The position numbers and the translations under genes were made by a program. Below, piece by piece: positions 1 to 64,000 of a DNA stretch of 64,000 bases; position 1 is the stretch's first letter; each line of letters opens with the position of its first letter. The notes under the pieces were generated by a model. That model was given only the letters and a program-made list of their open reading frames with translations. It did not search any database and was not told the origin of the DNA. The stretch is taken from contig JAADVB010000021.1 of NCBI GenBank assembly GCA_023334545.1, positions 61,423 through 125,422 on the forward strand. The letters are read 5' to 3'. This stretch comes from Salisapilia sapeloensis CBS 127946. Taxonomy: Eukaryota; Protista; Oomycota.

Positions 1-764
1 TGCTCGAAAGAGCCAAACGCGAGAAAGTGCGGCAAGCAAAGCGGCATCAAGCAGCAGGAAAGATTCAGTCGGTTGCTAGAGGTTACCTAGGAAGAGTCCG
101 CGTCAAACAGACCCAGCAGCGTATCGAACGAGAGCGCAACGCCCGTACTAAAGAGATGGAAGAGCAATTAGCGACAGCTGAAGCCAAGCTTAAGGAGGCC
201 TTGTCGGAACAGGAGACTGCTGCTGCGGAAGAAGCTGCAGACAACTGGGTCGAGTACTGGGACGAAAGCGCCCAAACATCGTACTTTTACAATATTAAAA
301 CGCAAGAAGCAACGTGGACGCGACCTACATGCTGGGGACCTGCGGACACGACAATGGACACTTCTGCTAGTGCGAATGCGACGGAATACGCCTATCAGAC
401 AGTTCCCGTCATGTCCATGCCAAGCCTGCAGTACTATACAAGCTACTTCCAGCCGCAGCCGATGATCCTCCCCTCGTTCATGATGCCGCAAGCATACGCT
501 GACAACTTTGGTTACTACGACCCGATGGGCCAGTACCATTACTACAACGAAGCCCAAGCGTTCAATAGCAGCTACTACCTGCCTACGATGACAAACCCAG
601 CAGCAGACGCCTACACGGATCAAAGCCTGTCGTACGAGACGACAGAAGGGAGTGAGATTCCTGTCGATGCAGCGACGGACCAGCCGTGGCAGCAGTACTA
701 TGACGAGCACACTGGCGCAGCCTACTACTACAATCGCGAGACTGGTGAAAACTACTGGGCCTAG
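1..764 (+). CDS. 3' part of an IQ-motif + WW-domain protein (5' end outside window)
   Basis: IQ-like AAGKIQSVARGYLGRVR; two WW domains NWVEYWDESAQTSYFYNIKTQEATWTRP and PWQQYYDEHTGAAYYYNRETGENYW; frame open from the window start, TAG ending at 764. Confidence 0.8.
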   Translation, partial: LERAKREKVRQAKRHQAAGKIQSVARGYLGRVRVKQTQQRIERERNARTKEMEEQLATAEAKLKEALSEQETAAAEEAADNWVEYWDESAQTSYFYNIKTQEATWTRPTCWGPADTTMDTSASANATEYAYQTVPVMSMPSLQYYTSYFQPQPMILPSFMMPQAYADNFGYYDPMGQYHYYNEAQAFNSSYYLPTMTNPAADAYTDQSLSYETTEGSEIPVDAATDQPWQQYYDEHTGAAYYYNRETGENYWA

Positions 765-831
765 AATTGCGAATCAAAGCCACACTTTATATATTAGCTT
801 TCTGCCTCGAGCTCTTGCTTTCTCTGCATAT

Positions 832-3126
832 TCATAAACTATCGTCCGACAGATCAAAATTCGACTGATCCAACGACTGCTGATTCGGCTCGATACTGCT
901 GTAGGACTGGTCAAGATTCAGCATACGCGCGACGGGCTCCGTGTGCATCGGCGAAGAGTCTTTCGTCGTCGACAGAAGCGATTCTTGAAATGCCTTCGTG
1001 ATCATCTCTCCCGCTAGTGCATCCTCGGCATCGTACGCTAGTGCCTACTCGCCATGACAAAGATCAGCATCTTACTATGAATGCAAAGAAGAAAGAGACG
1101 TACCGAATGGTAGCAATCGATGGCTTGGTCCAGATTACCCTGCAGATGGTATGTGAATCCCAACGCAGAGTGTGCTGACGCCTACAGTGCACAGCACATA
1201 AGACGATTGCAACAACTAAATCTAAGTAAAAAAGCGTCCGTACGTTGGTGGGGGCATAGTATAGCGCTCGCGTAAAGGACCGTATCGCCTGATCAAACTT
1301 CCTACAGCAACAAAATAAGACCACAAGTCACCAAGTAAAGCAGATTCAGCGCACCGTAGCTTGCGATACGAGACGCCGAGGTTGAAAAGTGTCGGTTCCC
1401 ACGCCACCATCAAATTCTACATCCATCCAAGTGCATTAGACGCATCATCTACGACGTACAAGCCAGCGAAAGGTACCGTTGGCAAATGACTACAAAGTTC
1501 CAAAGCCTTGTTGAACGAAGCAACCGCCTGGATGTAGTTGCTACAGGCAAAGTAGACGCTCCCGAGCTCATTATAGATGAGCGGATCAGTCGGACACAGC
1601 TCCTTTGCTTTATTCAAACAGTCCTGAGCTTCAAGAAGCGAGTCTGTGCGTCGATGCTCCATGCCCAAGTACAAATGGACGAGATGATTCGCCGGGAAGA
1701 GCTTCGCAGCTATTCGGTAGCACCCCACTGCCTGGTCGCTATCCTTTTGTGCTGCAAATGCGTTGCCGAATCCAACCCACGCAGGCGCATAAGAAGCGTC
1801 CATCGTAGTCGCTTTATAAAAATAGTGCTGCGCCTCGTCCATCTTGTCGGCCAGCAGGTAGTAACACCCGACGCTGTACCACGTACTACCCTCCTTCGGG
1901 TACGTATCCACCTACACAGCGTCATTAGACCAAGCCACTTATACTAGGCAGGAGGAACGTACCAACTCATGTGCATAGTGATACAGATTCTGCTTTTGTT
2001 TGAGCACAAACATGCTGCCGACGTAGACAGTTATGATGTGAGGGTTGTACGGATCCTGCCGTCGCACTCGTTCACATACTTCCAGACTCTGATCGAACTG
2101 CTGCTGACAGTACAAGGTCTCTGCTTTCGCCACCGCCTAGTCAAACGAGATAAGAGCTGCATCTATGAGATAGCTGTACTGACAACGTACCAAGTCGAGG
2201 TTCTGCTGCAGACCGAGCTTATCGTCGATACTAGAGAACTTGTCGTCAACAGAGACATTCGCATCGTACTTGCCAATGTAGGATGCGTACAAGTCCTTGA
2301 GCATGCCTGTTTCATCTTTGGCAAAGTGGAGCGACCGCATTAACTGCTTCTCATCTACTGCCGTTAAGACCTGCTTTTCCACGAGACGAAAGAAAGCTTC
2401 CGAGCACCGGACATCACATCTAATCGATGCTTTCCAGTACGTCGTCGCTTTCTCCAGATGACCAGCAGCTTCATACGCGTCGGCGATCACAAGCGCTAAG
2501 GACGCAACGACATTGACTTCACTGTCCTGTACCTGATCAAACTGCTTGCTCATCTCTTCCACGCCGTCCTCCGTACTCGGCAAGAGAGATCCGACGTATT
2601 CTAAATACTCTTCATGGTCGTCCGTCGCCAGCATACACTGACCGAGCAGTAGGAACGCATCAAGCGCCGTCTTGTCCAGCGTCGTCCTCGTCTGTAAGCT
2701 TAGCAATGGAGACTTTTGTAGTAACGCAATGGCTCGCTTGTATTGCTTCTCCCAGTAGCAGCACTCGATGAACAGCAGCTCATCCTGTGCCGACTGCGGC
2801 GCGAGCGATGCCAATTTATCTGCGTAGAAGAGTGCAGAGCCAAAGTGGCGTTTACGTAGACACGAGTGTGTGAGCTGACGAAGAGAGTGGATGGGGCGGA
2901 CAGAGCCACTGGGCGAAGCGCTCCTCCTAGGCGCTGCCACCATGGGCTTGGTGGTGACGAGGTCCGAGGACGGCACAACATTCGAGTGGTCTCGGTTCTC
3001 TCTATTGGCAAGCGGCGGTATATCCTCACGGCGCTTAATACGTTTGCCGACCATTATTCGATCTTCCTGGACAATTCTCCGGCGCTTATGGCTCGCCTCC
3101 GTCTCCACTGGCGCGTCTCTTACCAT
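832..3126 (-). CDS. CDC16: Anaphase-promoting complex subunit 6 (CDC16), TPR protein, multi-exon
   Basis: Successive minus-strand ORFs give STWYSVGCYYLL, AQHYFYKATTMDASYAPAWVGFGNAFA, DPLIYNELG and WEPTLFNLG, typical of APC6; joined by short GT-AG introns; last exon ends SDDSL-TGA at 832-834; start ATG uncertain. Confidence 0.88.
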
Positions 3127-3403: not shown

Positions 3404-4025
3404 ATGAAGGTCGAGTCGTTACCAGATCTCGTTGCTGCCGTCGAAGACGTGCTACGAAAGCAACCAGAGCTACCTCTCAAAAGCAAGACTGAGCTACGCC
3501 AACTTTTAGAGTATTTAGCATGTATGAAACTAGCCTACTGCCTTGGTACTCATTGCTGCCTGCAGAGCCTACTCGGGCGACTTGGAAGAACTCGCGTCGT
3601 TTGCTCACTTTGACTATTCACGCAACTATACTCGCAACTTGATCTCGACGGATAATGAGACCTACGCACTCATGCTCTTGTGCTGGAACCGCGGAAAATA
3701 CAGCCCCATCCATGACCATCCGTGCAATGGCTGCTGGGTCAAGCACATCCAAGGCCGTGTCAATGAGGTGCGTTACGTCCGGTCGGAAGATGGAAAGCTG
3801 GCGGAAGCAGCCAATGACGTCATCACGTCCGGCGTCTCGTACATGGACGACTCGCTCGGTCTGCACAAGATTGGCAACCCGGATGCCGATATGGATGCCA
3901 TCACACTCCACCTGTACTCGCCTCCGTACGAAAAGTGCCGCATCTGGCTTGACCCAGAAGACGCCGACAAGAGCTCTGTTGCTGTCTCGAACTACTACTC
4001 GGAGTTTGGTGAGATTACCGGATAA
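3404..4025 (+). CDS. CDO1: Cysteine dioxygenase type I (one intron at ~3522-3575)
   Basis: Cupin motifs SPIHDHPCNGCWVK, LHKIGN and TLHLYSPPY; Fe-binding His triad and Cys/Tyr cross-link residues present. Confidence 0.92.
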
Positions 4026-4512
4026 CCGAAATGCACATCCCACGTCTGTTTTCTCCTTGTCCTCGTTTCCTTATCTGCCATCATATGCAAGTTTAGCTTG
4101 CTATAATATATACTTGGCTGCACTACGATACAATTAAGCTGTTTCTCCTGCAACTGAATGCAGCATGAAGAGATAGGTGCTCATATAAGAAAAAATCGTC
4201 CTTCTGCGGTTGTATGTCTGATGACATCCGACAATTCTAGCTCCTTGTCTTTTATCCTCAAAAGATGACGTGTAGATTCTATTCCTACGACTTGATACTG
4301 TGTCATACCTATAGCAATCTATAATTTGATGAATACGTTCATCTCTTCTTTTTTCTTCCAGCATTTAAACTCATGAGAAAGCGTCGTACATGTCCATTTG
4401 ACAGCAAGATGCAATACCTACGAAAGTAAATCTGTAGGATTTATTTGATGTTTTCATACCTATCTGAAAGGAACTAACATGTGCGCTACAGATCGACGGC
4501 ACGAAAAATAGT

Positions 4513-5351
4513 CTAAATGAAGCCAAAGTAACTGAGGAGTACGACGCCAAGCCAGAGGTAGGTGAACGGGATGCCCATGAACCAAAGCACAGCGCAGATG
4601 AGCAGTGTGCTTCCTCCAAAGCGAGATGCAGGCGCCTGCTCCACGTTCTCATCTCTTCCACGTCCTCCGTTCGGTCTAGTATTACAGAAAGATAAGAATG
4701 TTTGTCACGCGATACGAGCTCAAGACAAGACGTACTGTGGCTGCTGGAACGGATTCCCATTTCGGCGTCGCATGTGAGGAGGTGGTCCGCCGAAGGAAGT
4801 AAAGGTCATGCCCGGGCCGAACTGTCTGACGCGAATGCCACCGGGTCCTCCTCGCATACCATCCTGGAAAAAGACCGAGAACGGATCTTCTCCTCCAAAG
4901 AAGGCTCTGAAAAGCTCCTCGGCATCTTGCTGCTGGAAGCCGTGCATGTTCGCACCAGCCCCAGCGTTTCCGCTCGGACCGCCAGTAACAGCGTCCTTGC
5001 CGAAGCGATCATAATGACTTCGCTTGCTCTCATCCGACAGCACAGCGTACGCCTACAGAGTAATAACTAGCTTCTCAGTACTTGTATATGGTACACAAGG
5101 TATAATAAAGAGTTATACCTCTCCAATTTCCTTAAACTTCTTCTCCGCCGCTTCCTTATCGTCCGGATTCTTGTCTAGAAGGTGTCGTCGAGGAAGGAAT
5201 GAGAATCTAATCGGCAAAACACTCACTTGGAAATACTCTACGTACCTGGATGATGGCGTACAGCTAGCTTCCGATACGCCTTCTTAATCTCGTCACCAGT
5301 CGCCGTCTCACTCACCTGCAGCACCTCATAATACGTCGTGTCGACTGCCAT
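4513..5351 (-). CDS. J-domain (DnaJ/Hsp40) protein with G/F-rich region and C-terminal membrane anchor, multi-exon
   Basis: [35 protein letters not shown] then D across an intron (HPD); [14 protein letters not shown]; F-G-rich linker; last exon [34 protein letters not shown]. Confidence 0.88.
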
Positions 5352-5578
5352 CGTCCCGCTCGGCGACGAGTGTCTCGAGTTGTGTCCAGTGGCAATACGT
5401 GTTTTATTCGTGGCATCTTGTAAACGTCCGCTGACATAAAAACGCGTCTTCTCATAAACTGCCACCGCGCTTTCCGCCGCACAACCACAAAACAGCACTG
5501 ATCGAACCGCCGGGAGCGCATACAAATATGATGGTAGGCTCCTTCCAATGCTACCGATGCACACATACCTAAACGTCT

Positions 5579-5965
5579 ATGCAGTCCATGTTGATGAAAG
5601 GAGCGCGTACGACTACGCAGGTGGCCCGCAAGGGTGCCCGTCAGATGTCCTCTGCTACGGAAGAAGAGGCCAAGTGTACGTTTCATCTCGCTTTTCAAAT
5701 ACAAATACAAAGATCTTACGTATGCAATATGAAAACAGCTCAGATGGAGCGATGGACCATGATCTCTAAGGGCATGATGGGTCTCGTCGGTGCCTTCACG
5801 GTCTTCCAGATTTTCGCGCACGGACACGAACACCATGAGCCTGCCCCCGAGTACACGTACCTCAAGCTTCGCAACAAGCCGTTCCCGTGGGAAGTCTCGG
5901 ACTGCGACCTGTTGGACTTTGAGTGCAAGAGGAAGGTCCGTGAGGCCAAGGAGGCGATGGAATAA
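5579..5965 (+). CDS. COX6A: Cytochrome c oxidase subunit 6A-like, mitochondrial (intron 5676-5738)
   Basis: Mitochondrial presequence-like N-terminus, single TM helix, His-rich HEHHE and YLKLRNKPFPW motif typical of COX VIa. Confidence 0.8.
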   Translation: MQSMLMKGARTTTQVARKGARQMSSATEEEAKCTFHLAFQIQIQRSYVCNMKTAQMERWTMISKGMMGLVGAFTVFQIFAHGHEHHEPAPEYTYLKLRNKPFPWEVSDCDLLDFECKRKVREAKEAME

Positions 5966-52520: not shown

Positions 52521-53870
52521 TTACGTCTGCTCTTCTGCTACTTTGCTAATATCTTCATACTCGACCTTGTCCAGTGTCTCTCCCCTATGCCATTCATGAG
52601 CTACGTATAATAGTATGTACAGACAGACGGTCCTACCTTCGATGGCCAGACTCGATCCGCACGCGAGCGTTAAAGTCGTCGACGTTGATGGACAGAAGAG
52701 TGGCGGTGCTCCCTCGACCTACCCCGTTGACGATCTTCACTAATCGACCCTGTTGTGGGATGACCGTCTCTAGGTCGTCCTGGTCCACTTCCAGCATGTC
52801 GCCAGAGTCGTTCAGCTTGACTGTCGCTGCGAACTTGTTTTTCACCTTGACGATCGCCCCCTTCTTCTTGTAGTAGGCTCCTCCGCCGACGGTTTTGTTC
52901 ATGACCTTAACGACGATCCCGCTGGTTACCCAGTTCTCTTGTCGCTTCTCCTCCTCTCGTTTCCTCTTTCGCTCCTTCAGTCGTTCCTCCTCTTCCATAA
53001 TCGTATCCACTGCGCTTCGTTTCGTACTACTTCCGATGTCACGACGCTCATCAGTGAAATTGGCTGTTCTAGAGAAGACACTGGCTGCATCTGCCGGAGT
53101 CTCCGCGGCACTCGACTTCTTCTTGCTCTTTGGAGCTAGAGACAGCGTAATCTTTCCGTCCACTGGCTCCACCTTTGGCTTCTTCACAGGTCGCTCCTCT
53201 TGTCCGTCTACTTCCTTGGCTCTTGCCTCCTTGAGCTGTCGTTGGAGGAACTTGCGGTTGCGCTCTTCATGATCCAAATCGGACTTGCGCTTTTCTTCCA
53301 GCTCCTTCTGCCGAGCGATGGTCTTTGGATCTCGGTCAATGTACTGGATGAACCAGCCCTTCTCCGTCTCATCCACGACGCACTTGCCCATTCGGCCGAG
53401 GTACTGGACAAAGGACGTGAGTGTCGTCCACTGCGTCGCGTTCATATGCACATGAGACTTGTCGGCGATGTACTCATTGTACACGACCGTCGCCTTCATC
53501 CGCTTCGTCCCGTGCCGCCTCCGAAGGTTGTCCAAGAAAGCTGCTTCGAACTAGAATATGTCATCAACTCCATCCAGACACAAAAAGTAGACACAGCAGT
53601 ACCATCTCACTATAGCCTCCGATGAACTTGTCTGGGTTGTCTGCCACGACCATCATCTGCCGCTGGTGGCTCTCCGACTGCGTATGGCACTTGAATCCGT
53701 TCTCGTCTCGACACTGCTTCTGACAGACCTGGCAAAACCACCGGAGCTTCTGCAGCCCTTTTGCCTGCATTTCGTCCATCAGAGACTTGAGTTTCTTCTA
53801 CATAGTACAAAAGGAATACCTTCATGCGGTTGCTGATGGCTTTAGGCGATAGAAAATCATGCTTGCCCAT
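52521..53870 (-). CDS. KIN17: KIN17 DNA/RNA-binding protein, multi-exon
   Basis: MGKHDFLSPKAISNRMK, KGLQKLRWFCQVCQKQCRDENGFKCHTQSESHQRQM, HMNATQWTTLTSFVQYLG, DETEKGWFIQYID, DQDDLETVIP, last exon VEYEDISK. Confidence 0.95.
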
Positions 53871-53978
53871 GCTTCCTTCCGATCAATGAGGTCGTGTCCT
53901 GTCTTCGTGTCCGCTGTCTCGATATATTTAGGAGACTCTGTCCCTGGTCGAGTAAACTGGCACTACGACAGCATCACG

Positions 53979-55463
53979 ATGGAGACACAGGACGCTCGGC
54001 GGCCGATGCACGTCCTGCATCGAGTGCTGGACACGATACTCCGAGAGACCTACGGACACGAATGGAGTGTTCAGCTTCTGGCTACTGGATCCATCGGTCT
54101 GCTTATTGGCTGTGGACTTTACTTTCTATCTCCTCTGCTCGAAGACGAACTGCATCTCTACGAGCGATACCTGCCTTGGATCGATGCTCTCGACTGGACG
54201 CAATACAACTCGTTCGTAGTAGACCATCTTGTCGTCTTCTCGGCCATCTCACTCCCCACCTTTTGGCTATTGGCGTTTAACGTCGCGTACTCGAGAACAG
54301 ATACGCACGTCGACACGTCGCTGCTTATTCTTCGCCTCGCCAGCTGCCTCGTGGTCTCTTTCTCCGTCACGGTCATCCTGACAGACTTTTTGTCTCGACG
54401 AGTCATGCTCGCCATTATCTCTCTCTTCTACGGCGGCATGGGACTCATGTACGCCTGGACCGTTCCGGTCTGGCGATGGTACATGAACCACTCTAACTCG
54501 GATGGCTTGATCACCTTCCTCCCTGCTTCTGCCAGAGAACTATTGATGGAAACCAGCCTACTGGAGTGGCTTTCTGGCCCTCAGTACTTTGAAAAGTTCC
54601 AGCAGATCGTGCCCTTCCTTTTGCCACTCTCTCGGTCCGAACAGGTCCAGCTGCTAGAGAAGATGCCATCCGAGACCCAAGCCATGATGACAAAGCCTGG
54701 TCTCGTGACGCTTCTGCCGGCTCCCGTACAGAATGTGCTGCTGCCATCGTCACCGCCCAAACCGTTGGCGCTGGAGATGGAGACTGCAAAGGAAGTGGAG
54801 ACGGATACCACGTCTTCATCGTCCGAGGAGCAGCTAGAGCGAACGTCGTCCGGTTTTGACTTCCACCGGGTGGAAACAAAGAGGCAGCAGGACTTGATCG
54901 CCCAAAGCAGAGAAAGGGTTCTGACCGATATCGTGTCCAAGCGACTGTGGACGTACGCTTGGTTTTTATACTTATGTTTGTAAACGGACTAACACGTCAT
55001 GTGTGCAGTGGATGCAGACAGCTAGTGCAATTCCCATCGTCTTCGAATTTAGACCGAACGGCAGCCTTCTCCAGTGCTCTACTTGCGCTGCAGGTACACA
55101 CTCCATGTTTGATAGCAGGAGACTTCTTGGAACTAAAGCTTTGAATTGTAGCTCTACTCATCCCGATCTAGTCGTCAGGCGTTGGCATCTACTCTCCGCT
55201 TCATCAGCGTCTCGACGCTGGGATCGATAGCAACTGCAGCGCTAGTGCTTCGTATTTGCCAGTGGCTAGTCCGAACGAACCATGCCCCATTCCAGCGGTA
55301 TGTTCATCAACTGCTTCTGCGCAGTCGTTCTAGGAACGAGTCTCTTACGCACTCGTCCGACGAAAAAGACCACAGAGACACTGGAATTAGCACTGGCAAG
55401 TCCGTCACTGCAGTCTCGGCCGTCGTCGCGGTGGCTTATGTCATTCGAAAGATGCGCTCGTAG
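53979..55463 (+). CDS. Uncharacterised multi-pass membrane protein (intron after ~54953)
   Basis: Long ORF with several hydrophobic helices (LLIGCGLYFL; LVVFSAISLPTFWLLAF; LVVSFSVTVILTDFL; LAIISLFYGGMGLMYAW) plus a downstream exon to 55463; no family recognised. Confidence 0.65.
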
Positions 55464-56399
55464 ATTTTAGTTTTGGTTGACGTTGACACAATTGTAGTAG
55501 CAAACGATTACATAAGCCATTGGAAGCACAAAAAATCAAAGGAATTGGTTGTTTCATTCGTTTATCTTTATCATAAGAAAGTAAGCTGCATTCGTTCACA
55601 ATTGCAACGCAGCTCACCAAATAGCAATCGAACTCTATGATTATACGACAATGCCACTCTCACTAATGGCTGAGCCTTCATGAACATAGAAAAGCTTTAC
55701 TTCAAGGACATTTAGGACATAAGTACTTATTGACAAACAGATTTCATGTATGTCTACGTTTGGGGCCCTCTTGAAAGGAACCTCCCACCTAGGGCGGAGA
55801 TATGAACATAGAAAAATCCGCTATTTTGGATACCGTGTTGATTTAGTAGCTACAAGATAGAGCATCCCTACGACTTGCACGATTTATCTGTAGCATCCTG
55901 CAACAAGAGGATCACGTGCATTCAGTCGAGGACTTCGGCCTATAATGCTGAGTTGGCTGAACAGTGAAGTTCAGGCATGAGTCGTAGTAACTGCTTCGTT
56001 CCATTCGTAAATCGTGTTGATCTGGTTGTTCTGCTGTTGACATACGAACGCCGGGAGGATGGCTCAATCTGCACGCCAGAATTCGTCCTGAATGACTTAA
56101 TGAATAGTGAGGTGCACTCAGGTCGAGTTACTATTCCTAAAGTCCGTCATAAACACTACTGAATGTGTTTGCCTATCTTCCCTGCTGTGTCGAAAAGCGG
56201 TTTCTGCGTGTCTTAAAGTAAGATCAAGCGCCAGTCTGTGGCCAGTTGATTTTAGCCACTATCCAATATCGGCCGTTATAAAGCTGGAAAGGATTACAGC
56301 ATGAGATTTTACAGAAATATCTTGCTGGAAATTGGCTCACGAGTAGCTTGAGCGTTGAAAAGTGACATTTGAGTTAGACGACGTACAGATTGGCAGTGG

Positions 56400-59300
56400 T
56401 GGGTTTGTATACTAGTAAAATATTGCAGTTGGAGTCCATCAAAAATCTGGCTACTATTCTATTGAAACTTAAGCAGCTTTAGTGTTTACGGTAAACACCA
56501 AAGACCGTCGGCTGATCTTATAATTCTCAAATTAAAGACGATAAAATCATTCTACGTTGTTGAAGACTAATGGTTAACTTGGTGTGCGGCTTACAAGATC
56601 ACATAATAATAGACATTACTCGGCAAACTCCAGCATAATTGAATACCTTGAAAATAGATTAGCTACTACGAAAAATTTTTAAATAATGCGACTAACAACG
56701 GCAAAAACATATTCTAAAACAAAAATATCATGGCTACAAATAGCAAACTGTGTAGAAAAGATAAGAAAATCCGTAGCTAATAACAAACAAACGCATTGCG
56801 TAGTGATTTTCTTTAAGCAACAAAGAAAATTTCATTTGAAAAAAATAATTTTGTCTTCTTAAAAACGATTGAAGCTGGCTTTAAAAAATGAAATATTAAT
56901 GCAAAAACAAAACTAAAACACTTTAAAAGCAATATTTGATGGCGTTATGCTATTTATAACGTCTCGTTTGTAAAACAGGTTTATGCATAAAACAAAACAA
57001 AATAGTCAATTTACAAACGCATTGTACAGTAGACATTACGTAAAGCGTTCATTACTATTGCTTGTAAAAATACAAACTGTTGTATACTTTTAGTTGCGTT
57101 AAGCAAAGTATCATTTAATGAAAATATACTCGTCACTTTTCAAAAAAAAGCTAAGCATCAAAATATAAAACTATGTAGTTCCCATTGAAGATCTGCTTTC
57201 AGATAGACAAATAGCATATCTATATGTTTTTAAACAAAACAATTTGAACACACAAATACTTGTTAGTCACGTACCACTCCATGATGATCTATAAAACAAA
57301 TGTACAAAATAATATGTTGTCGGAAACATCAAAGTTTATATCGCGCATCAGCTTTCATAACACTTTTATTATCTATTAAAAAAACATAAACAATTTAATA
57401 ATACCTACAGACTGTTTTCTATCAAAGTATTTGATAAAACTACTTTTTGTTTAATGATACTTACTATTTACAAATCAACAACTTCAGCATTATTTGTCAT
57501 TTAATTTGTTTAACATAAAGCAATTAATTTATTACAGCAAAAAAAATTACTAGCAGTTCAATGCTGAAACAACTTAGAGCCTTATACAACAAAACATTAA
57601 TAGTATTTAGAAAAATAAAAACGTGAATAAACAAAAAATGTTCTATTAAATCCTAAAATTTTACAAAAAATCGAATATAGAGCTAGGTAAAATAGTGCTT
57701 GTTTTACAGTGTTCTGTGTATAACAAAACAAATATATTGAATCGTCGTTAAAGCGCATTAAAATAGTAATATAATGCTACATATGTACATGTTTTTTTTA
57801 TTTATAAGTAGCAAATAGTTTTCATAATACGCTGCCTTAAGTTATTATTTAGTGCATTATATAAAAAACTAATGACTTTTATTTTTTGTTTCAAAAGCAT
57901 TTGATATCTATTTAAAAACATTATATTATTTCGACATTGTAACTTGGTGTCATTTACGCCACGTATCATGTAAAACCATGTAGTATGCAAATAAAACAAA
58001 CATGTTAAAAATATAATGCTTTTCGCAAACAAAATGTCTGTTATCAATATAAGAAGCAATACAAAACATTACATCTTATACATAAGCTACAAGTAAGCAA
58101 GTTTAAATTATTTACAAATTTGCTAGACGATATTTAATCTTGCATGCCATATATTTAGCGTTTTTTACGCTTTATTAACTCGTATGCTTCTATAAAATAG
58201 TTAGTTAAATTTGCAGCAATGCCCGTTGTTATATTTTTTTGTTAAATCTGGTTTTGCTAAATCATTAAAGCAAGATTTATTTTATGCATGTTTTATAAAC
58301 TTATAGAATATAATTTGCAATTTTACGAAGTAAAATTTTTTTCAGTATATAGTCTTATAGAGTTTAATTGTAGTATTTCCTTTTTTAATTATTTGTTCAA
58401 TTTTATTTGTTTTAAAAAATTTTATTCTATCAAGTCTTTTGTATTTTCTGCAGCATTATTTTTATTTTCTGTGTGCCTATAAGCATTTATAACATTTAAA
58501 AAGTATTGATTTTGTTCTTGTAAACTTTACAAAAATATTTGTTGAAAACGTTATACAAGTTACAGTTTTATATTATAGTCTGCATTTTTTAAGAATGCTT
58601 TAACCATGAGGTTTTTCATGTTCGATGCTCTTTTATTTAATTATTTTCCTTTAAGTTGTTTATGATATGTTGACTTGTATTTATGTTGCAATTATAAAAA
58701 CAAAAATCTTTTGTAAAATTCGTTTCAAAATAAACTGACTAAACTTCTTTGCAAAAGTTTTATATGGTTTGTAAATGTTAAGTTCTACACATGTAAACAA
58801 CAACATTTATTTTAAACCTTTTATAGTACATAATCGCAAAAAAAGTACATGCAATTAATCTATATTAAATAATTTTTTACAGTTTTGTAAGAAAATTGAC
58901 TGCATATTTTTTATCAGTATTTTATATCAAAATTTTATTATCTTGTTGATGTTTTCTTTATGCTATAGAGTACGCTTCATGATTGTTTAGAGATCATAAA
59001 ACCTTTAAAATTTGCTTTATACAACATAAGAAAGTTGAGTTTCAATAAAATTTTATTTTGATTTGTTTTTTTAACATTCTGATTTTATACAATTAGCACA
59101 TGAAAATCATATAAATTTTGTGTATTTGTATGTTTAAAAGACGTATTTAGAAAATTAATTTTTATATTTTAGAATTTTTGACCGTCTAAATATGATTAAG
59201 TCAAACACATTGTAATTTAAGATTTTTAAATTTATTCTTAAATAGACAGAACATTTTAGTACTTACAGTGATAACCAGAAATCTACGCGAAGTCCTTTTA

Positions 59301-59420
59301 TTGTAGTAAAAAATTGAGGTTTCTTAGCATTCGTAACGTAAAAAATTTAAGTGCTATACTTTATAAACATATGTTCTTGTTGGTAACTTTTTCTGTTGAA
59401 GTACTATGGCGAGCTTTGTA
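56400..59420. other. Gene-free AT-rich (~21-26% GC) degenerate island, probable hypermutated relic
   Basis: Hand counts of 78, 73 and 64 G+C per 300 nt in three samples; no ORF of 100 aa or more; strong CC/GG and GA depletion. Confidence 0.75.
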
Positions 59421-59666
59421 TATTTAATAAAGGAGCGCTGTTGCTATTGGCATTAGAAGTGATCTCTTCATGAATTTGTCCAAAAGATAGGATCCTAAAT
59501 TTTTAGTGTAGTAATTATCATATAAATATAGATCTAAGGGATGTGCAGTGACCAAATTCACTACGTTGTGTCTTCCTTGTCCACGATAGGTACCTTTTGA
59601 GTAGACCACATAAGAAAAAGTATGTGTGCATAGAGCTGGGAAACAATCGCGTGTTGGCCTTTTTAT

Positions 59667-60389
59667 TTAAGCATTTAGTGTGCGTTCATAGCTGGCCATT
59701 TGCTGAGCTGCTTCGGAGATGCTTACTTCGACCTTAATGACACCGCGGCGTTCTAGAGCTTCCAATGTAAAAGCTTCGACGAGTCGGTTGCTCTAGACAC
59801 ACATACGTTTTGTCAGCTAGTTGATGTGGTGCAGTAAGCTAACAATGTTACAAAGTAAACGGCGAGGTTTTCGGCAGACGAGTGCGTGATAGGTAATAGC
59901 GAGCAATCTGATTTTGGGAAGCTATGTGACGCGAGTTCAGTTTCTGGAGCTAGCGTATATGCATACATGTCACGCTGTGAGAGTCCTACCTGAAAGAAGC
60001 TTTGTCTTCAGTCTCGATACGCACGTTGTCATCGTTGATACTGATCTGTGCATCAGACAAGTTTGTTACAGAATGGTACAGTAGTAAGAAGTTCGATGTA
60101 TGAGAACCTCAAGTGCTTGGCTCTTCATGGGAACGAGGAAGGACTCGTTCATTTCTCGACAGATCGATTTCGAAATGCGCTTGATTTCACCAAAATCGAC
60201 GACATATCCGTCGTGGCCAACTCTCCCTGTAAGCGTAACACCCACGCGGTAGTTGTGGCCATGCAGTTTCTCTCGGAATCCTTTGTACGCGATGAAATGG
60301 GCTGCATTAAACTTCATATAGTCCTTCGATACGTGTACTTTAAACACTTCGCCGTCTTTAGATCCTATCGTAGCTGTAGTCGAGGCCAT
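59667..60389 (-). CDS. 6-pyruvoyl-tetrahydropterin synthase family, PTPS-III type (Glu active site), multi-exon
   Basis: MKFNAAHFI, FREKLHGHNYRVGV (ExxHGH), VVDFGEIK; downstream exons FPKSDCSLLPITHSSAENLAVY and VEVSISEAAQQMASYE, then TAA at 59667-59669. Confidence 0.88.
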
Positions 60390-60568
60390 TTCAGTTGTGA
60401 ATTAGATGTCCTATGATCTTGAGTTTATATGCCGGTGAGTTATATTCTGATATTGATGGCTCTGTGGTCCCAGAAGAGCATTTACTGATCGGAATGAGTG
60501 TGCTGACAGGATTCGTTGGTTTTAGTACCAATTGTGTGTTCAGTGGCAGTTTGTGAAAACATCAATTG

Positions 60569-61573
60569 ATGACCAAAGTCGCTAATCTCTTGCTCGTCGG
60601 CCTTGTGTGCGTCTCGAGCGTCTTCATGGCGACATCTACAGGCGATGGAACCTCTATAAACACTATTAAAGTTGTTGTAGAAGTTCAGAATGCGCCTATT
60701 CGATCCAGTGTTCTGCGTATTCCCAAGCCATCGAGTCTTCAGGAGCTAGATGTAGCATTGGAAGAGCACTTGCGTCAACAATTGCAGCAACCAGCAGTTA
60801 TACAGGACCTAGAGATATTCCGGTCGCTCGAGGGCCGATTCACACAACTACATTCGGCGGAAGAAGTGACTGGACGTACCCGATTGAATGTGATCCTTGA
60901 AGAAAAGGAACAGGATGAGCATCTCGCTCTACCAGCTCGACTGTTCGACACCAGTACTGGTGAGTTTCATATTGGAAGTCACAGAATTTTTCTAGGAGAA
61001 ATTGGAAACTCCGGCCAGGGCACTGGACTGACGACGTGGGACGGTGCTGCTGTCCTGGCCAAGTACTTGGAGAAGCATGTGGACGTCACTGGGTCAAGAA
61101 TCGTGGAGCTTGGTGCTGGAACGGGTTTAGCTGGACTCTCAGCTGCCTTGTTAGGCGCTTCTGAAGTCGTATTGACAGATTTAGCGTACACGCTTCCAAA
61201 TCTTTCCAAGAATGCGAGGAGGACGATGGAGGAAGCCTGTGGCGTGGACTCCAAAGTGCTCATCCAAGAGCTGGACTGGTTCAATCCTCCTGAAGACATA
61301 GGAGACATCGACTTTGTCCTGGCTGCAGATGTCGTGTGGGTAGAGGAGCTCATTCCGCCGCTCGTCCAAACCATGTACATGCTGCTGAAGCACTCCAAAG
61401 CTACTGCTCGTATCCTGATGTCGCACCAACACCGCAGTAAAGTATCGGATGGTGTCTTGTACGATCAACTTCAGAAATATGGTATGTCAAGGAGGCTATT
61501 TCCATCCGAGCTGCTGGATCCAAGCTTCCGTAGTGACAAGATCGACGTATTTGAAATTCAACTGGAACATTAG
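60569..61573 (+). CDS. METTL21/family-16 protein-lysine methyltransferase with signal-peptide-like N-terminus, intronless
   Basis: GTGLTTWDGAAVLAKYL, RIVELGAGTGLAGL, VVLTD, ELDW, FVLAADVVW. Confidence 0.87.
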   Translation: MTKVANLLLVGLVCVSSVFMATSTGDGTSINTIKVVVEVQNAPIRSSVLRIPKPSSLQELDVALEEHLRQQLQQPAVIQDLEIFRSLEGRFTQLHSAEEVTGRTRLNVILEEKEQDEHLALPARLFDTSTGEFHIGSHRIFLGEIGNSGQGTGLTTWDGAAVLAKYLEKHVDVTGSRIVELGAGTGLAGLSAALLGASEVVLTDLAYTLPNLSKNARRTMEEACGVDSKVLIQELDWFNPPEDIGDIDFVLAADVVWVEELIPPLVQTMYMLLKHSKATARILMSHQHRSKVSDGVLYDQLQKYGMSRRLFPSELLDPSFRSDKIDVFEIQLEH

Positions 61574-61843
61574 AAGCAAATCTGCTTACGTTTCTGTATC
61601 ATTAAGATATCAATCCGTATGAGTCTTTCCAGCAAAGAACTCTCACTTTCACTTAAACTAGAAGGTGTCATGGTTAAAGGAAAGGTTTAGAAGAGAATGA
61701 GATGACAGAAGAGATATTGCTTTGCTGATAGCAAGTACTCTAGCACAAGATTCACGAAACCTAGCAGATCTTCATTGGAAACAGAAATTTTTTAATTCAG
61801 TTTTATTTTTCATTCTTGCGCCGTCAAACTCATGTCAAGCTTT

Positions 61844-64000
61844 TCATGCTGCACATGCGTCTGCAATGTTCTGAGTACGACATCGAGCTCTGAAAGTAGA
61901 TTCCGTTTTCTGCAAGTCACTCTACATGAAGATCCACTTAACTATCTCGACGTATCCCATGCAGGAGGCAAGCATCACGACTGAGCATTCTTTATCTTCC
62001 CACGCTCCTGACAAACGATCTTCACGCACTCGAAGCGTCATGCTATCGTTTATGCTGAAGCCTTCGTCTAAAATTGTTGTCGCCAATTCAACAGATTGTC
62101 CTTTGTCTCCTTCACTGATGTACACAGCATTGTGGATGCGCCCGGAAAAGCGTCTTGGTAACCTCGCATAGTTCTACGAACGAAGGCTTTGTAGTAACCG
62201 CAGTTGATCCCAAGCTCTTTTGATTGGTCGGTCTGTCTTGGGCATTTCTTTCTCTTATCTGTTTTTGCTGGTTTAGAATCATCTTGACAGCAGTCCACAT
62301 GCTCGGTCGGTTCGTTCTTATGCTGCTTTTCATGCCATTTTACTTTATATTTCCTGTGTTTGACTGACGAATAAAAGCATTCCCATTAGACATAGAAGTT
62401 TCAATATCGTCGTATGTAGTTGATTCCTCGCCATTTTGTGTAGTTAGCGTGTTTTTTGCTTTTTTCATTTCCATCATAAAGTCATCAGGAGAGATAAAGC
62501 CGTTTTCCGGCACACGCTTCACCCCTTCCTTGATTACAATTCCTCCAACGAGGGCGAGAGACGCACAAATAAGGGAGATCGCCAGCCGAATATTATCTTT
62601 CGCGAGTTTTCGCTTCTTCTTCTCTCTTAAAGCTGTCACGAGAGCGTCAAAGTTGTTCTGAAGTAATTTTAGCCCTCTCTCGGTGCCTACTAAGCGCTCC
62701 TCAAACTTTTGAAGAGTATTTCTCATGCGTCGTGCCCACGCAGCACTTCCTGCATTGGAAGTTGATGCTTCCACAATATAGTTGTTTTTTTGTCTTTTAG
62801 AGATAATACCTCACTCTCTTTATTCCGACATCATGTCAATGAACAGCTCCCGATCAATATCAAACTAGACCAAGTATCGATGTATCGCCACGTCTAAGCC
62901 TTCTTGTACCAGTGACTTTATGTCTTTCGACTGTAAGTGCTCTATCGCGAAAGTCAAGATGAGAACGGTATCGATAACCGAGGTGGAAAAGAACAGCGTC
63001 GACTCGATCAGCTTTGACTGCTCTGGTACAGATACACCTGTAAGACCAACTAGCTTCTGAGCACACTTCGCGTACTAGCGCTTCATGATCTCCATGATCT
63101 TATCTCGAGATTTATCCTTCAGCACTTCACTTTCTGCTGCTTTCGACACCAACTGGTTGGCGTTGAAACTTTTGTACGGATCTAGCTCATAGCAGATCAT
63201 GCGTTCCAGAGCAGCCAAGTGTTGGAAGACTATGGGACGCTGCATCAACGTCGACCCATCCAAAAATTGTGCTCTTTTTATCCATTCTTTTTTTCTTGTC
63301 GATCCAATTGAAAACCATATCTCTCTTTGCAGCATTCTCTGTTGTAAATGCAAATTATAGCATCTCAAGCCTGTAATCGTCCAGAACGGAGGACGATTTG
63401 CATATCCAATCCGACTTTGTTAAAGCCTCCTTTACATCTTTGACGTCTTCATGCCTCAATTTCATATCCTCCACTGAGCTTCGAACGATCGATTGACGTA
63501 AGAAGCCTTGCACAATTTCGTGGTCGCTACTTTTAATCGCTTTCGTGAAGCCTGTGAACGGATCCAAAAGTTTATTTGGCTCGAAGCCAGATACGCCTGC
63601 GCATTCATCTTTCGACCCTCTTATAGGATGATCATACACTGTGTAAGGATCCGCGCCTTGCTTTAAAAGCGCATTAGATAATAGCTGAAAATGGTTGTTA
63701 ATTGCATTACGCAATAGCGTTTGACCAGCATCATTCTGAGGGTTGATGGAAGAGCCATGGGCTAGTAGGTACAACGCAGTTTTATTCACTAGAATCGCCA
63801 TACGGACCTTTAGTCGCGTAAATAAGTCGTTAATAATTGTGCTCATTAGAGATATGGAGATTCACTCCATTTTCCACGAGCAGCTTTACTGATTCCAACA
63901 ACCCTCCGCTAGCAGCCAAGTCCAAAGCTGTTTGGTGATTTTCGTTCACTACGGTAGCATCGGCATCGTTGTCAAGGAGAAGCTGAATAATGCCTATCGC
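61844..64000 (-). pseudogene. Disrupted ankyrin-repeat gene (5' end outside window)
   Basis: Ankyrin fragments IIQLLLDNDADATVVNENHQTALDLAA, VLESVKLLVENGVNL, LLAHGSSINPQNDAGQTLL, SVVMLASCMGYVEIVKW; frameshifts near 63905, ~63800 and ~63370; in-frame stops at 63075, 62865, 62820, 62174 and 61922. Confidence 0.78.

What the first reader, a model, noticed from the sequence alone, without database searches (positions are those of the whole stretch)
56400..59420. AT island with a both-strand YC-to-YT hypermutation signature, neither fungal RIP nor CpG decay
Hand counts in three 300-nt samples. 56881-57180: 41 C with 0 CC, 9 TC, 12 GC, 20 AC; 37 G with 2 GG, 4 GA, 12 GC, 19 GT (about 15 GA expected from the A content). 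57481-57780: 38 C with 2 CC; 35 G with 1 GG, 7 GA. 58321-58620: 29 C with 3 CC; 35 G with 1 GG, 6 GA. Cytosines after a pyrimidine, and their complements GG/GA, are depleted, while CpG (8 in the first sample), CpA and GpC are kept or enriched. AT-rich spacer DNA elsewhere in the window (e.g. 4021-4080) has plenty of CC. Established: ascomycete RIP depletes CpA/TpG, 5mC decay usually depletes CpG, and TC/CC preference is the APOBEC3-type deaminase context. Inference: a repeat-targeted C-to-T mutator (non-CG methyltransferase plus deamination, or an AID/APOBEC-like deaminase) erased a ~3 kb element. I know of no such system described for this lineage.
Basis: partly seen in the sequence, partly recalled or inferred. 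Interest (0 to 1): 0.88.

Follow-up and report, generated by a model that had tools for sequence, protein, structure and literature searches.

The report
AT-rich island, likely a small centromere
A unique, gene-free 3-kb AT-rich stretch in a compact oomycete chromosome really does lack cytosines that follow a pyrimidine, but it looks more like a small centromere or fixed replication origin shaped by a local C-to-T bias than like a repeat erased by a genome-defence mutator.

Summary
Over the core (56700-59300, 24% GC) the strand-pooled odds ratios are CC/GG 0.45, TC/GA 0.69, GpC 2.09 and CpG 1.09, all far outside shuffles except CpG. Other non-coding DNA in the window lacks the pattern, and so do synonymous sites of its genes.

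A one-parameter model reproduces the di- and trinucleotide profile: C-to-T on both strands, three times faster after a pyrimidine. Classical RIP and CpG decay are excluded.

The inference of a repeat-targeted mutator that erased an element is not supported:
- The island is single-copy at 80% likeness or more in the organism's 23-Mb contig set.
- It has no repeats, no Pfam relic, no tRNA and no Rfam match.
- Its edges are graded.
- The bias is strongest at the centre (57751-58250), where the AT skew changes sign (58100).

It fills a 4.2-kb gene-free gap between two convergent genes in an otherwise packed region. My best reading (0.5) is a short AT-rich regional centromere, possibly with a fixed origin, shaped in place by a local bias.

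The scan had already noted similar AT islands on other pieces of this genome, some with the same TC/CC depletion and some near Copia relics. Those notes are unchecked.

The parts
55464..59666 (.). Gene-free gap of 4.2 kb between two convergent gene ends. It is by far the longest non-ORF stretch in the window.
   Evidence: The + strand membrane-protein gene stops at 55461-55463. The - strand PTPS gene stops at 59667-59669. Other non-ORF segments are at most 772 nt, against 5048 nt here.
56700..59300 (.). AT-rich core at 24% GC (19-29% in 200-nt windows), unique sequence, carrying the YC-depleted, GpC-enriched signature.
   Evidence: Composition. No Rfam match, no tRNA, only chance-level repeats, no Pfam hit. 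Single-copy at 80% or more in the contig set.
56250..56700 (.). Left slope. GC falls from about 43% to 27% and the signature appears gradually.
   Evidence: YC/RC index 0.73 then 0.60. For 56400-56900: GC dinucleotide 1.69, TC/GA 0.83.
59300..59666 (.). Right slope. GC rises from about 27% to 45%.
   Evidence: For 59200-59690: TC/GA 0.84, GC dinucleotide 1.25.
57751..58250 (.). Centre of symmetry, where the YC depletion is strongest and the AT skew changes sign.
   Evidence: YC/RC index 0.27, with 27 YC against 98 RC; Fisher p 0.009 against the other four 500-nt core windows. Cumulative A-T reaches its maximum at 58100.
56700..58100 (.). Left arm. The + strand is A-rich and slightly C-rich.
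   Evidence: AT skew +0.107 (z 3.3), GC skew -0.091 (z -1.6) (profile).
58100..59300 (.). Right arm. The + strand is T-rich.
   Evidence: AT skew -0.131 (z -4.1), GC skew +0.021 (not significant). The two arms share no homology in direct or inverted orientation.
57045..57660 (.). Weak patch of 3-nt periodicity in G/C. It may be a faint coding relic or chance.
   Evidence: Period-3 power 7-8 with constant phase; p 0.008-0.034 after scanning all windows. The open pieces there have no Pfam hit.
53859..55463 (+). Left flanking gene, a multi-pass membrane protein without a Pfam family, with its 3' end facing the island.
59667..60389 (-). Right flanking gene, 6-pyruvoyl-tetrahydropterin synthase. 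It is intact, has several exons, and its 3' end faces the island.
   Evidence: Pfam PTPS E 1.9e-14. 81% identity to Phytophthora pseudosyringae PTPS. Exons mapped by tblastx.

Best explanation
The island is the AT-rich core of a 4.2-kb gene-free gap in a compact nuclear chromosome of a peronosporalean-type oomycete. I read it as a short, unique, AT-rich regional centromere of the diatom, Plasmodium or Cyanidioschyzon kind, possibly coupled to a constitutively used replication origin as in Candida and Yarrowia.

Shown here: the composition is what a both-strand C-to-T (G-to-A) decay would leave if it ran about three times faster when the C follows a pyrimidine. The bias is confined to the island, grades in over about 500 nt on each side, and peaks at the centre where the AT skew changes sign.

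Inferred: the decay happened in place over a long time. The cause could be that this DNA is unconstrained and non-recombining, or that kinetochore- or origin-bound or single-stranded DNA is more exposed to deamination or less accessible to repair of dipyrimidine lesions. Either way it produced the low-GC DNA itself.

Not shown: centromere function, which enzyme or lesion is responsible, and the direction of the substitutions.
For: - Setting: one 22-25% GC island in a 64-kb window that averages 51% GC and is gene-dense and intron-poor.
- The gap lies between convergent 3' ends and is about 7 times longer than any other non-ORF stretch in the window.
- The sequence is unique. There are no repeats, RNA genes or protein relics, and it is single-copy and contiguous with both flanks in an independent contig set.
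- The AT skew switches sign mid-island (z +3.3 and -4.1, switch at 58100). The YC/RC index reaches its minimum at the same place (0.27, p 0.009).
- The signature is absent from other non-coding DNA and from 4-fold degenerate sites of the window's genes. There, G3 before a purine is 0.631 against 0.656 before a pyrimidine (p 0.13), and C3 after a pyrimidine is not lower.
- A threefold YC decay model fits the di- and trinucleotide profiles and the GC-containing 4-mers.
- Literature: diatom centromeres are low-GC, unique and occur once per chromosome, and Plasmodium and C. merolae have 2-4 kb AT-rich centromeres (10.1101/096016). Candida and Yarrowia centromeres show a skew switch read as a constitutive origin, and in Yarrowia this is an AT skew with a local GC drop (PMC2924309).
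- Unchecked leads from the scan: comparable 2.3-3.6 kb islands on other pieces of this genome, several with a mid-island skew flip.
Against: - No functional data exist: no CENP-A, Hi-C or replication data.
- I could not count islands per chromosome.
- Known oomycete centromeres (Phytophthora sojae and the Pythium-type T2T genomes) are 200 kb or more and rich in Copia-like elements (PMC7082073, PMC11139960). No such element is detectable in this window.
- The GC skew is weak.
- GC is lowest on the right arm, not at the centre.
- Synteny with relatives is not conserved, so positional conservation could not be tested.
- Composition alone cannot tell decay from a GC-normal ancestor apart from a long-standing equilibrium or from selection on sequence.
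Confidence: 0.5

Rival explanations
1. An inserted or duplicated element (a transposon or a gene) was recognised and erased by a dedicated C-to-T hypermutation system, either RIP-like or an AID/APOBEC-like deaminase with YC preference. The island would then be its fossil, possibly a centromeric Copia-like element.
For: - The YC decay model fits quantitatively from a genome-like ancestor.
- The signature is restricted to the island and absent from genes and spacers.
- There is a weak period-3 patch at 57045-57660.
- Unchecked scan notes report the same TC/CC-depleted, GpC-spared pattern on other AT islands of this genome, some called Copia relics.
- Oomycete centromeres elsewhere are Copia-rich (PMC7082073).
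Against: - No other contig matches at 80% or more. Copies that undergo C-to-T at the same sites should stay alike.
- No RT, integrase or gag hit, or any other Pfam hit, in 36 open pieces.
- Most of the island has less codon periodicity than simulated mutated coding DNA (median 0.4 against 1.8, p 0.011).
- The preference is only about 3-fold, and 35% of the surviving C still follow a pyrimidine.
- The edges are graded and the intensity is centre-symmetric and coincides with a skew switch. The arms are not homologous.
Confidence: 0.2
2. A fixed bidirectional replication origin, or another non-centromeric structural AT island such as a divergently transcribed non-coding locus. Strand-asymmetric exposure of single-stranded DNA would produce both the skew and the decay.
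For: The + strand changes from A-rich to T-rich at 58100, the polarity expected around an origin or a divergent promoter (PMC2924309). The bias peaks at that point.
Against: A 64-kb window holds only one such island, whereas origins should be many times more frequent than chromosomes. The GC skew is not significant. YC depletion is present on both strands of both arms rather than on one strand per arm.
Confidence: 0.15
3. The composition is selected rather than mutational. The element would need A/T tracts interrupted by C or by GpC (for example TTTGTT/AACAAA and WGCW) for protein binding or DNA shape, and homopurine steps containing G would be avoided.
For: AACAAA-type 6-mers are about twice as frequent as under both the decay model and a first-order Markov null (z about 4). 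ATTA and AATT are depleted (z about -3).
Against: The GC-containing 4-mers are explained by dinucleotide-level decay alone. There is no 10-11 nt periodicity of AA/TT, no conserved repeat or motif array, and the signature fades smoothly with GC content on the slopes.
Confidence: 0.1
4. A foreign or organellar insertion (mitochondrial DNA copy, horizontal transfer or assembly chimera) that has this composition natively.
For: The GC content of about 22-25% is in the range I recall for oomycete mitochondrial DNA (my own knowledge, not tested).
Against: No ORF over 88 codons, no Pfam hit, no tRNA and no rRNA or Rfam match. An independent 101-kb contig runs through both junctions with no differences. 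The edges are graded, not sharp.
Confidence: 0.03

Closest known systems
Short AT-rich regional centromeres of diatoms (Phaeodactylum tricornutum), Plasmodium and Cyanidioschyzon merolae
   Same: A 2-4 kb low-GC, non-repetitive, gene-free stretch in an otherwise GC-normal, compact chromosome, with no conserved motif (10.1101/096016). Diatoms are also stramenopiles.
   Different: No CENP-A or episome-maintenance evidence here. A YC-specific depletion with GpC enrichment is not mentioned in the diatom paper I read (the word 'dinucleotide' does not occur in it).
Centromere-linked constitutive origins with skew switch in Candida albicans, C. lusitaniae and Yarrowia lipolytica
   Same: A strand-composition switch at the middle of a unique intergenic centromere. 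In Yarrowia it is an AT skew with a local GC drop and little GC skew (PMC2924309), as here.
   Different: A different kingdom; replication timing and ORC binding are unknown here; the context-specific C decay is not part of that description.
Phytophthora sojae centromeres (CoLT Copia-like transposon clusters)
   Same: The same broad lineage, since the window's proteins are 78-82% (KARI) and 81% (PTPS) identical to peronosporalean orthologues. Unchecked scan notes place Copia relics beside some other AT islands of this genome.
   Different: Those centromeres are 200 kb or more, repeat-rich and heterochromatic (PMC7082073). This locus is 3-4 kb, unique and without a detectable transposon.
Fungal repeat-induced point mutation (RIP) and basidiomycete RIP-like TCG hypermutation
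   Same: An AT-rich island in a GC-normal genome that can be modelled as C-to-T on both strands.
   Different: CpA/TpG is enriched, not depleted, and the composite RIP index is about -0.06. TCG (0.70) is no more depleted than TCA (0.76) or TCT (0.73). There is no duplicated partner. The organism is not a fungus.
APOBEC3-type deamination and UV dipyrimidine (SBS7-like) C-to-T signatures
   Same: The mutated C is the one that follows a pyrimidine, with no 3' effect (best fit 5' factor 3, 3' factor 1). TC and CC are depleted about equally relative to the genome background, which from my own knowledge resembles the UV pattern more than a single-motif APOBEC.
   Different: The preference is only about 3-fold. 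No polarised substitutions, tandem CC-to-TT changes or strand-coordinated clusters could be examined. No enzyme or exposure is known for this organism.

Membership tests
Ascomycete RIP | Depletion of CpA/TpG with excess TpA (substrate index at most 1.03, composite index above 0) | tested here: not met
   CA/TG odds ratio 1.25 and TA 0.85. From the counts, (CpA+TpG)/(ApC+GpT) = 298/272 = 1.10 and TpA/ApT = 636/612 = 1.04, giving a composite index of about -0.06.
Ascomycete RIP | The target is duplicated DNA, so partner copies exist | tested here: not met
   Only the source-identical contig was laid at 80% likeness or more out of 20,473 contigs totalling 23 Mb. There are no internal duplications.
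Ascomycete RIP | A RID/DIM-2-type C5-methyltransferase in the genome | not testable with these tools
5-methylcytosine CpG decay | CpG depletion with TpG/CpA excess | tested here: not met
   CpG odds ratio 1.09 (z 0.7) in the core.
AID/APOBEC-like deaminase footprint | Loss of C in a fixed 5' context (TC and/or CC) on both strands | tested here: met
   TC/GA 0.69, CC/GG 0.45, best-fitting 5'-pyrimidine factor about 3. The preference is weak compared with what I recall for APOBEC3 enzymes.
AID/APOBEC-like deaminase footprint | Polarised C-to-T substitutions against an ancestor or a sister copy, in strand-coordinated runs | not testable with these tools
   No homologous copy was found and relatives are not syntenic. 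Strand-resolved depletion is inconclusive.
Short AT-rich regional centromere (diatom type) | A low-GC stretch of a few kb, unique, non-repetitive and gene-free | tested here: met
Short AT-rich regional centromere (diatom type) | Exactly one per chromosome | not testable with these tools
   There is one in this 64-kb window. Other pieces are known only from unchecked first-stage notes.
Short AT-rich regional centromere (diatom type) | Occupied by the centromeric histone CENP-A, or supports episome maintenance | not testable with these tools
   No ChIP or functional data are reachable. Only one DNA contig set holds the sequence.
Centromere-linked constitutive origin (Candida/Yarrowia type) | Sign switch of strand skews at the centre | tested here: inconclusive
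   The AT skew switch is clear (+0.107 and -0.131, z 3.3 and -4.1, at 58100). The GC skew is not significant (-0.091 and +0.021).
Oomycete CoLT-type centromere | A cluster of Copia-like transposons over 100 kb or more | tested here: not met
   No reverse transcriptase, integrase or gag hit in the gap or in the window ORFs I scanned. Flanking genes lie within 1.3 kb of the core.
Organellar DNA insertion | Recognisable organellar genes, tRNAs or rRNAs | tested here: not met

The most novel reading that the evidence does not exclude
An oomycete carries a cytosine-to-thymine mutator with 5'-pyrimidine preference that is directed at particular chromosomal sites. It would be either a dedicated deaminase-type genome defence acting on centromere-associated retroelements, or a kinetochore- or origin-linked process. 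Either way it builds the roughly 3-kb low-GC cores that serve as diatom-like mini-centromeres. No RIP-like system is described outside fungi in the literature I could search, and known oomycete centromeres are 200 kb or more.
Probability: 0.17. Interest if true: 0.85.

Novelty: new variant of a known kind. Interest (0 to 1): 0.6.

Why it matters
If these islands are centromeres, a peronosporalean-type oomycete has 3-kb, transposon-free, diatom-like centromeres instead of the 200-350 kb Copia-rich ones described for Phytophthora. That would change the picture of centromere evolution in stramenopiles. It would also offer small DNA pieces to test as maintenance sequences for episomes in a group that is hard to engineer.

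The context-specific, centre-peaked C-to-T footprint gives a concrete handle on how low-GC centromere DNA arises: local mutation pressure, loss of GC-biased conversion, or a targeted mutator. If a dedicated mutator is behind it, it would be the first RIP-like system in oomycetes.

Tried and rejected
1. Synteny with relatives, to see whether an AT island sits at the same place. The lysine methyltransferase lies next to eIF2A and SHMT in two Logan assemblies, with no island. PTPS in Phytophthora pseudosyringae has other neighbours and an upstream LINE. This was uninformative.
2. Looking up the window's own proteins in the assembly index to reach other contigs of this genome. They are not on record, so other islands could not be fetched or aligned.
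3. Transposon or gene relic. Five ORFs and 36 open pieces had no Pfam hit. No Copia protein was available as a query, so a direct tblastn test was not possible.
4. RNA genes, tRNAs and organellar origin: nothing found.
5. Dyad symmetry or an ancient inverted repeat between the arms: alignment scores equal the null.
6. Nucleosome-like 10-11 nt periodicity: none.
7. A 3'-pyrimidine (either-side dipyrimidine) term in the decay model made the fit worse.
8. A genome-wide YC bias at synonymous sites: not seen.
9. Literature on RIP-like processes or small AT-rich centromeres in oomycetes: nothing found.
10. The neighbouring ankyrin-like region 61500-64000 does not carry the island's signature (TC/GA 1.22).
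Full report
**What the window is.** It is nuclear DNA of an oomycete. A ketol-acid reductoisomerase is 78-82% identical to those of Pythium, Lagenidium, Globisporangium, Phytophthora and Albugo, and 70-72% identical to Saprolegniales. A PTPS is 81% identical to that of Phytophthora pseudosyringae. A lysine methyltransferase is only 45-53% identical to any relative. The organism is therefore peronosporalean-type but not close to a sequenced genus. The window averages 51% GC (43-59% per kb away from the island), and is gene-dense with ORFs of up to 4,759 codons. One public contig set of 23 Mb in 20,473 contigs holds the island.

Over the core 56700-59300 (24% GC), with both strands pooled, the odds ratios are:
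- CC/GG 0.45
- TC/GA 0.69
- GpC 2.09
- CA/TG 1.25
- AC/GT 1.14
- CpG 1.09

Against shuffles the z-scores are -5.3 (CC/GG), -6.4 (TC/GA) and +7.5 (GpC). Both halves show the pattern on both strands.

The pattern is not a general property of non-coding or AT-richer DNA here. Pooled non-ORF DNA elsewhere has TC/GA 1.19, GpC 1.07 and CC 0.77, and patches under 45% GC have 1.22, 0.90 and 0.82. An index comparing C after pyrimidine with C after purine has a median of 0.98 over the window and drops to 0.27-0.61 only in the island.

Four-fold degenerate sites of the window's genes do not show it either. G before a purine is 0.631 against 0.656 before a pyrimidine (p 0.13), and C after a pyrimidine is not reduced. 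CC/GG is low genome-wide (about 0.73), so part of that depletion is background.

**What kind of process fits.** I simulated C-to-T on both strands, starting from random 2.6-kb pieces of the window and stopping at 24% GC.
- Without context the fit is poor (rmsd 0.401).
- With a threefold higher rate for C after a pyrimidine it is good (rmsd 0.108). Predicted CC is 0.42, GA 0.63, GC 2.01, CG 1.08 and AA 1.19.
- On the 16 NCN contexts the best model again has a 5' factor of 3 and no 3' factor (log2 rmsd 0.32 against 0.83).
- The enriched GC-containing 4-mers follow from this model.

137 of 392 remaining cytosines in 56400-59420 still follow a pyrimidine.

Classical RIP is excluded: CA/TG is enriched and, from the counts, the composite index is about -0.06. 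CpG decay is excluded too (CpG 1.09). TC and CC are depleted about equally relative to background. From my own knowledge, that and the absence of a 3' effect resemble the UV dipyrimidine pattern at least as much as an APOBEC motif. Composition alone cannot show the direction of change.

**What the island is not.**
- It has no tRNA, no Rfam match at E up to 1 and no repeat above chance.
- The two arms share no homology in either orientation.
- There is no Pfam hit in five ORFs or in 36 stop-to-stop pieces of 40 codons or more across the whole gap.
- Laying the organism's contigs at 80% likeness or more gave a single 101-kb contig that is identical and spans both flanks, and nothing else. The island is thus not an assembly chimera and has no recognisable second copy.
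- Codon periodicity is strong in the flanking genes (power 5-17) and is noise over most of the island (median 0.4). Coding DNA put through the decay model keeps a median of 1.8 (Mann-Whitney p 0.011).
- One patch, 57045-57660, has a weak periodic signal (p 0.008-0.034 after scanning). It could be a faint relic or chance.

**Anatomy.**
- The island fills a gap between convergent genes. The membrane-protein gene ends at 55463 and the PTPS gene ends at 59667. The gap is 4.2 kb, while no other non-ORF stretch exceeds 772 nt.
- GC falls and rises over about 500 nt on each side rather than stepwise, and the signature strengthens in step with it.
- The + strand is A-rich on the left arm (AT skew +0.107, z 3.3) and T-rich on the right (-0.131, z -4.1). 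The switch is at 58100. The GC skew is weak.
- The YC/RC index is V-shaped with its minimum of 0.27 at 57751-58250, the same place as the skew switch (Fisher p 0.009).

A centre-symmetric gradient that coincides with a strand switch fits a process anchored to the locus. It is not what an inserted element hit uniformly by a repeat-directed mutator should show.

**Interpretation.** A unique, gene-free, low-GC stretch of a few kb matches the short regional centromeres of diatoms, Plasmodium and C. merolae (10.1101/096016). The skew switch matches the constitutive-origin signature at Candida and Yarrowia centromeres, where Yarrowia shows an AT skew with a local GC drop (PMC2924309).

Known oomycete centromeres are very different: 200 kb or more and Copia-rich (PMC7082073, PMC11139960). 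I found no transposon in this window.

First-stage notes of this scan, which I could not check, report similar 2.3-3.6 kb AT islands on other pieces of the same genome. Several have a mid-island skew flip, some have the same TC/CC depletion with GpC spared, and some lie on or beside Copia relics. These notes keep a hybrid reading alive, in which centromere-associated retroelement remains were mutated to low GC. My own tests give no support for it at this locus.

**Verdict.**
- Best reading (0.5): a short AT-rich regional centromere, possibly with a fixed origin, whose composition was produced in place by a locally confined C-to-T bias after pyrimidines.
- Rivals: an element erased by a dedicated hypermutation system (0.2); a non-centromeric origin or divergently transcribed AT island (0.15); selection on sequence features (0.1); a foreign or organellar insert (0.03).
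- The decisive data are the island count per chromosome, CENP-A or Hi-C mapping, island-to-island and island-to-Copia alignments, and substitutions polarised against sister strains. None of these were reachable with the tools.

Noticed in passing
window 61574-64000 (- strand): An ankyrin-repeat reading frame continues across several frame changes and stops. GC is only 43% and codon periodicity is weak except at 62800-63100. It may be a decaying pseudogene or a gene with several short introns. It does not carry the island's dinucleotide signature (TC/GA 1.22, GpC 1.23).
   Followed up: partly
window 59700-64000 versus 1-55000: Everything to the right of the island, genes included, is at 43-47% GC against 50-59% on the left. 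The low-GC zone is therefore broader and asymmetric around the core.
   Followed up: no
window 60569-61573; L001 10001-11167; L002 10001-10999: The lysine methyltransferase gene sits next to eIF2A and SHMT genes in two related assemblies, but next to PTPS and the island here. This suggests a rearrangement breakpoint close to the island.
   Followed up: partly
window 56700-59300: The G/C indicator has a sharp spectral peak at a period of about 2.8 nt (power 13.3 against about 10 expected for the maximum of white noise). AACAAA-type 6-mers are twice as frequent as under a first-order Markov null. Neither is explained.
   Followed up: partly
window, all long ORFs: At 4-fold degenerate sites, C is much rarer when the next codon starts with a pyrimidine (0.467 against 0.618, p 2e-17). 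This 3'-context effect probably underlies the genome-wide CC/GG shortage and differs from the island's 5'-context effect.
   Followed up: no
L003 1-10000 (Phytophthora pseudosyringae): The 10 kb upstream of PTPS has no called gene but holds a LINE-type reverse transcriptase and endonuclease.
   Followed up: partly
window 1-2250 and 5251-5750: There are mild dips of the YC/RC index (0.69-0.74) in ordinary coding DNA (WW-domain and TPR/APC genes) at normal GC. They are probably an effect of amino-acid composition.
   Followed up: partly
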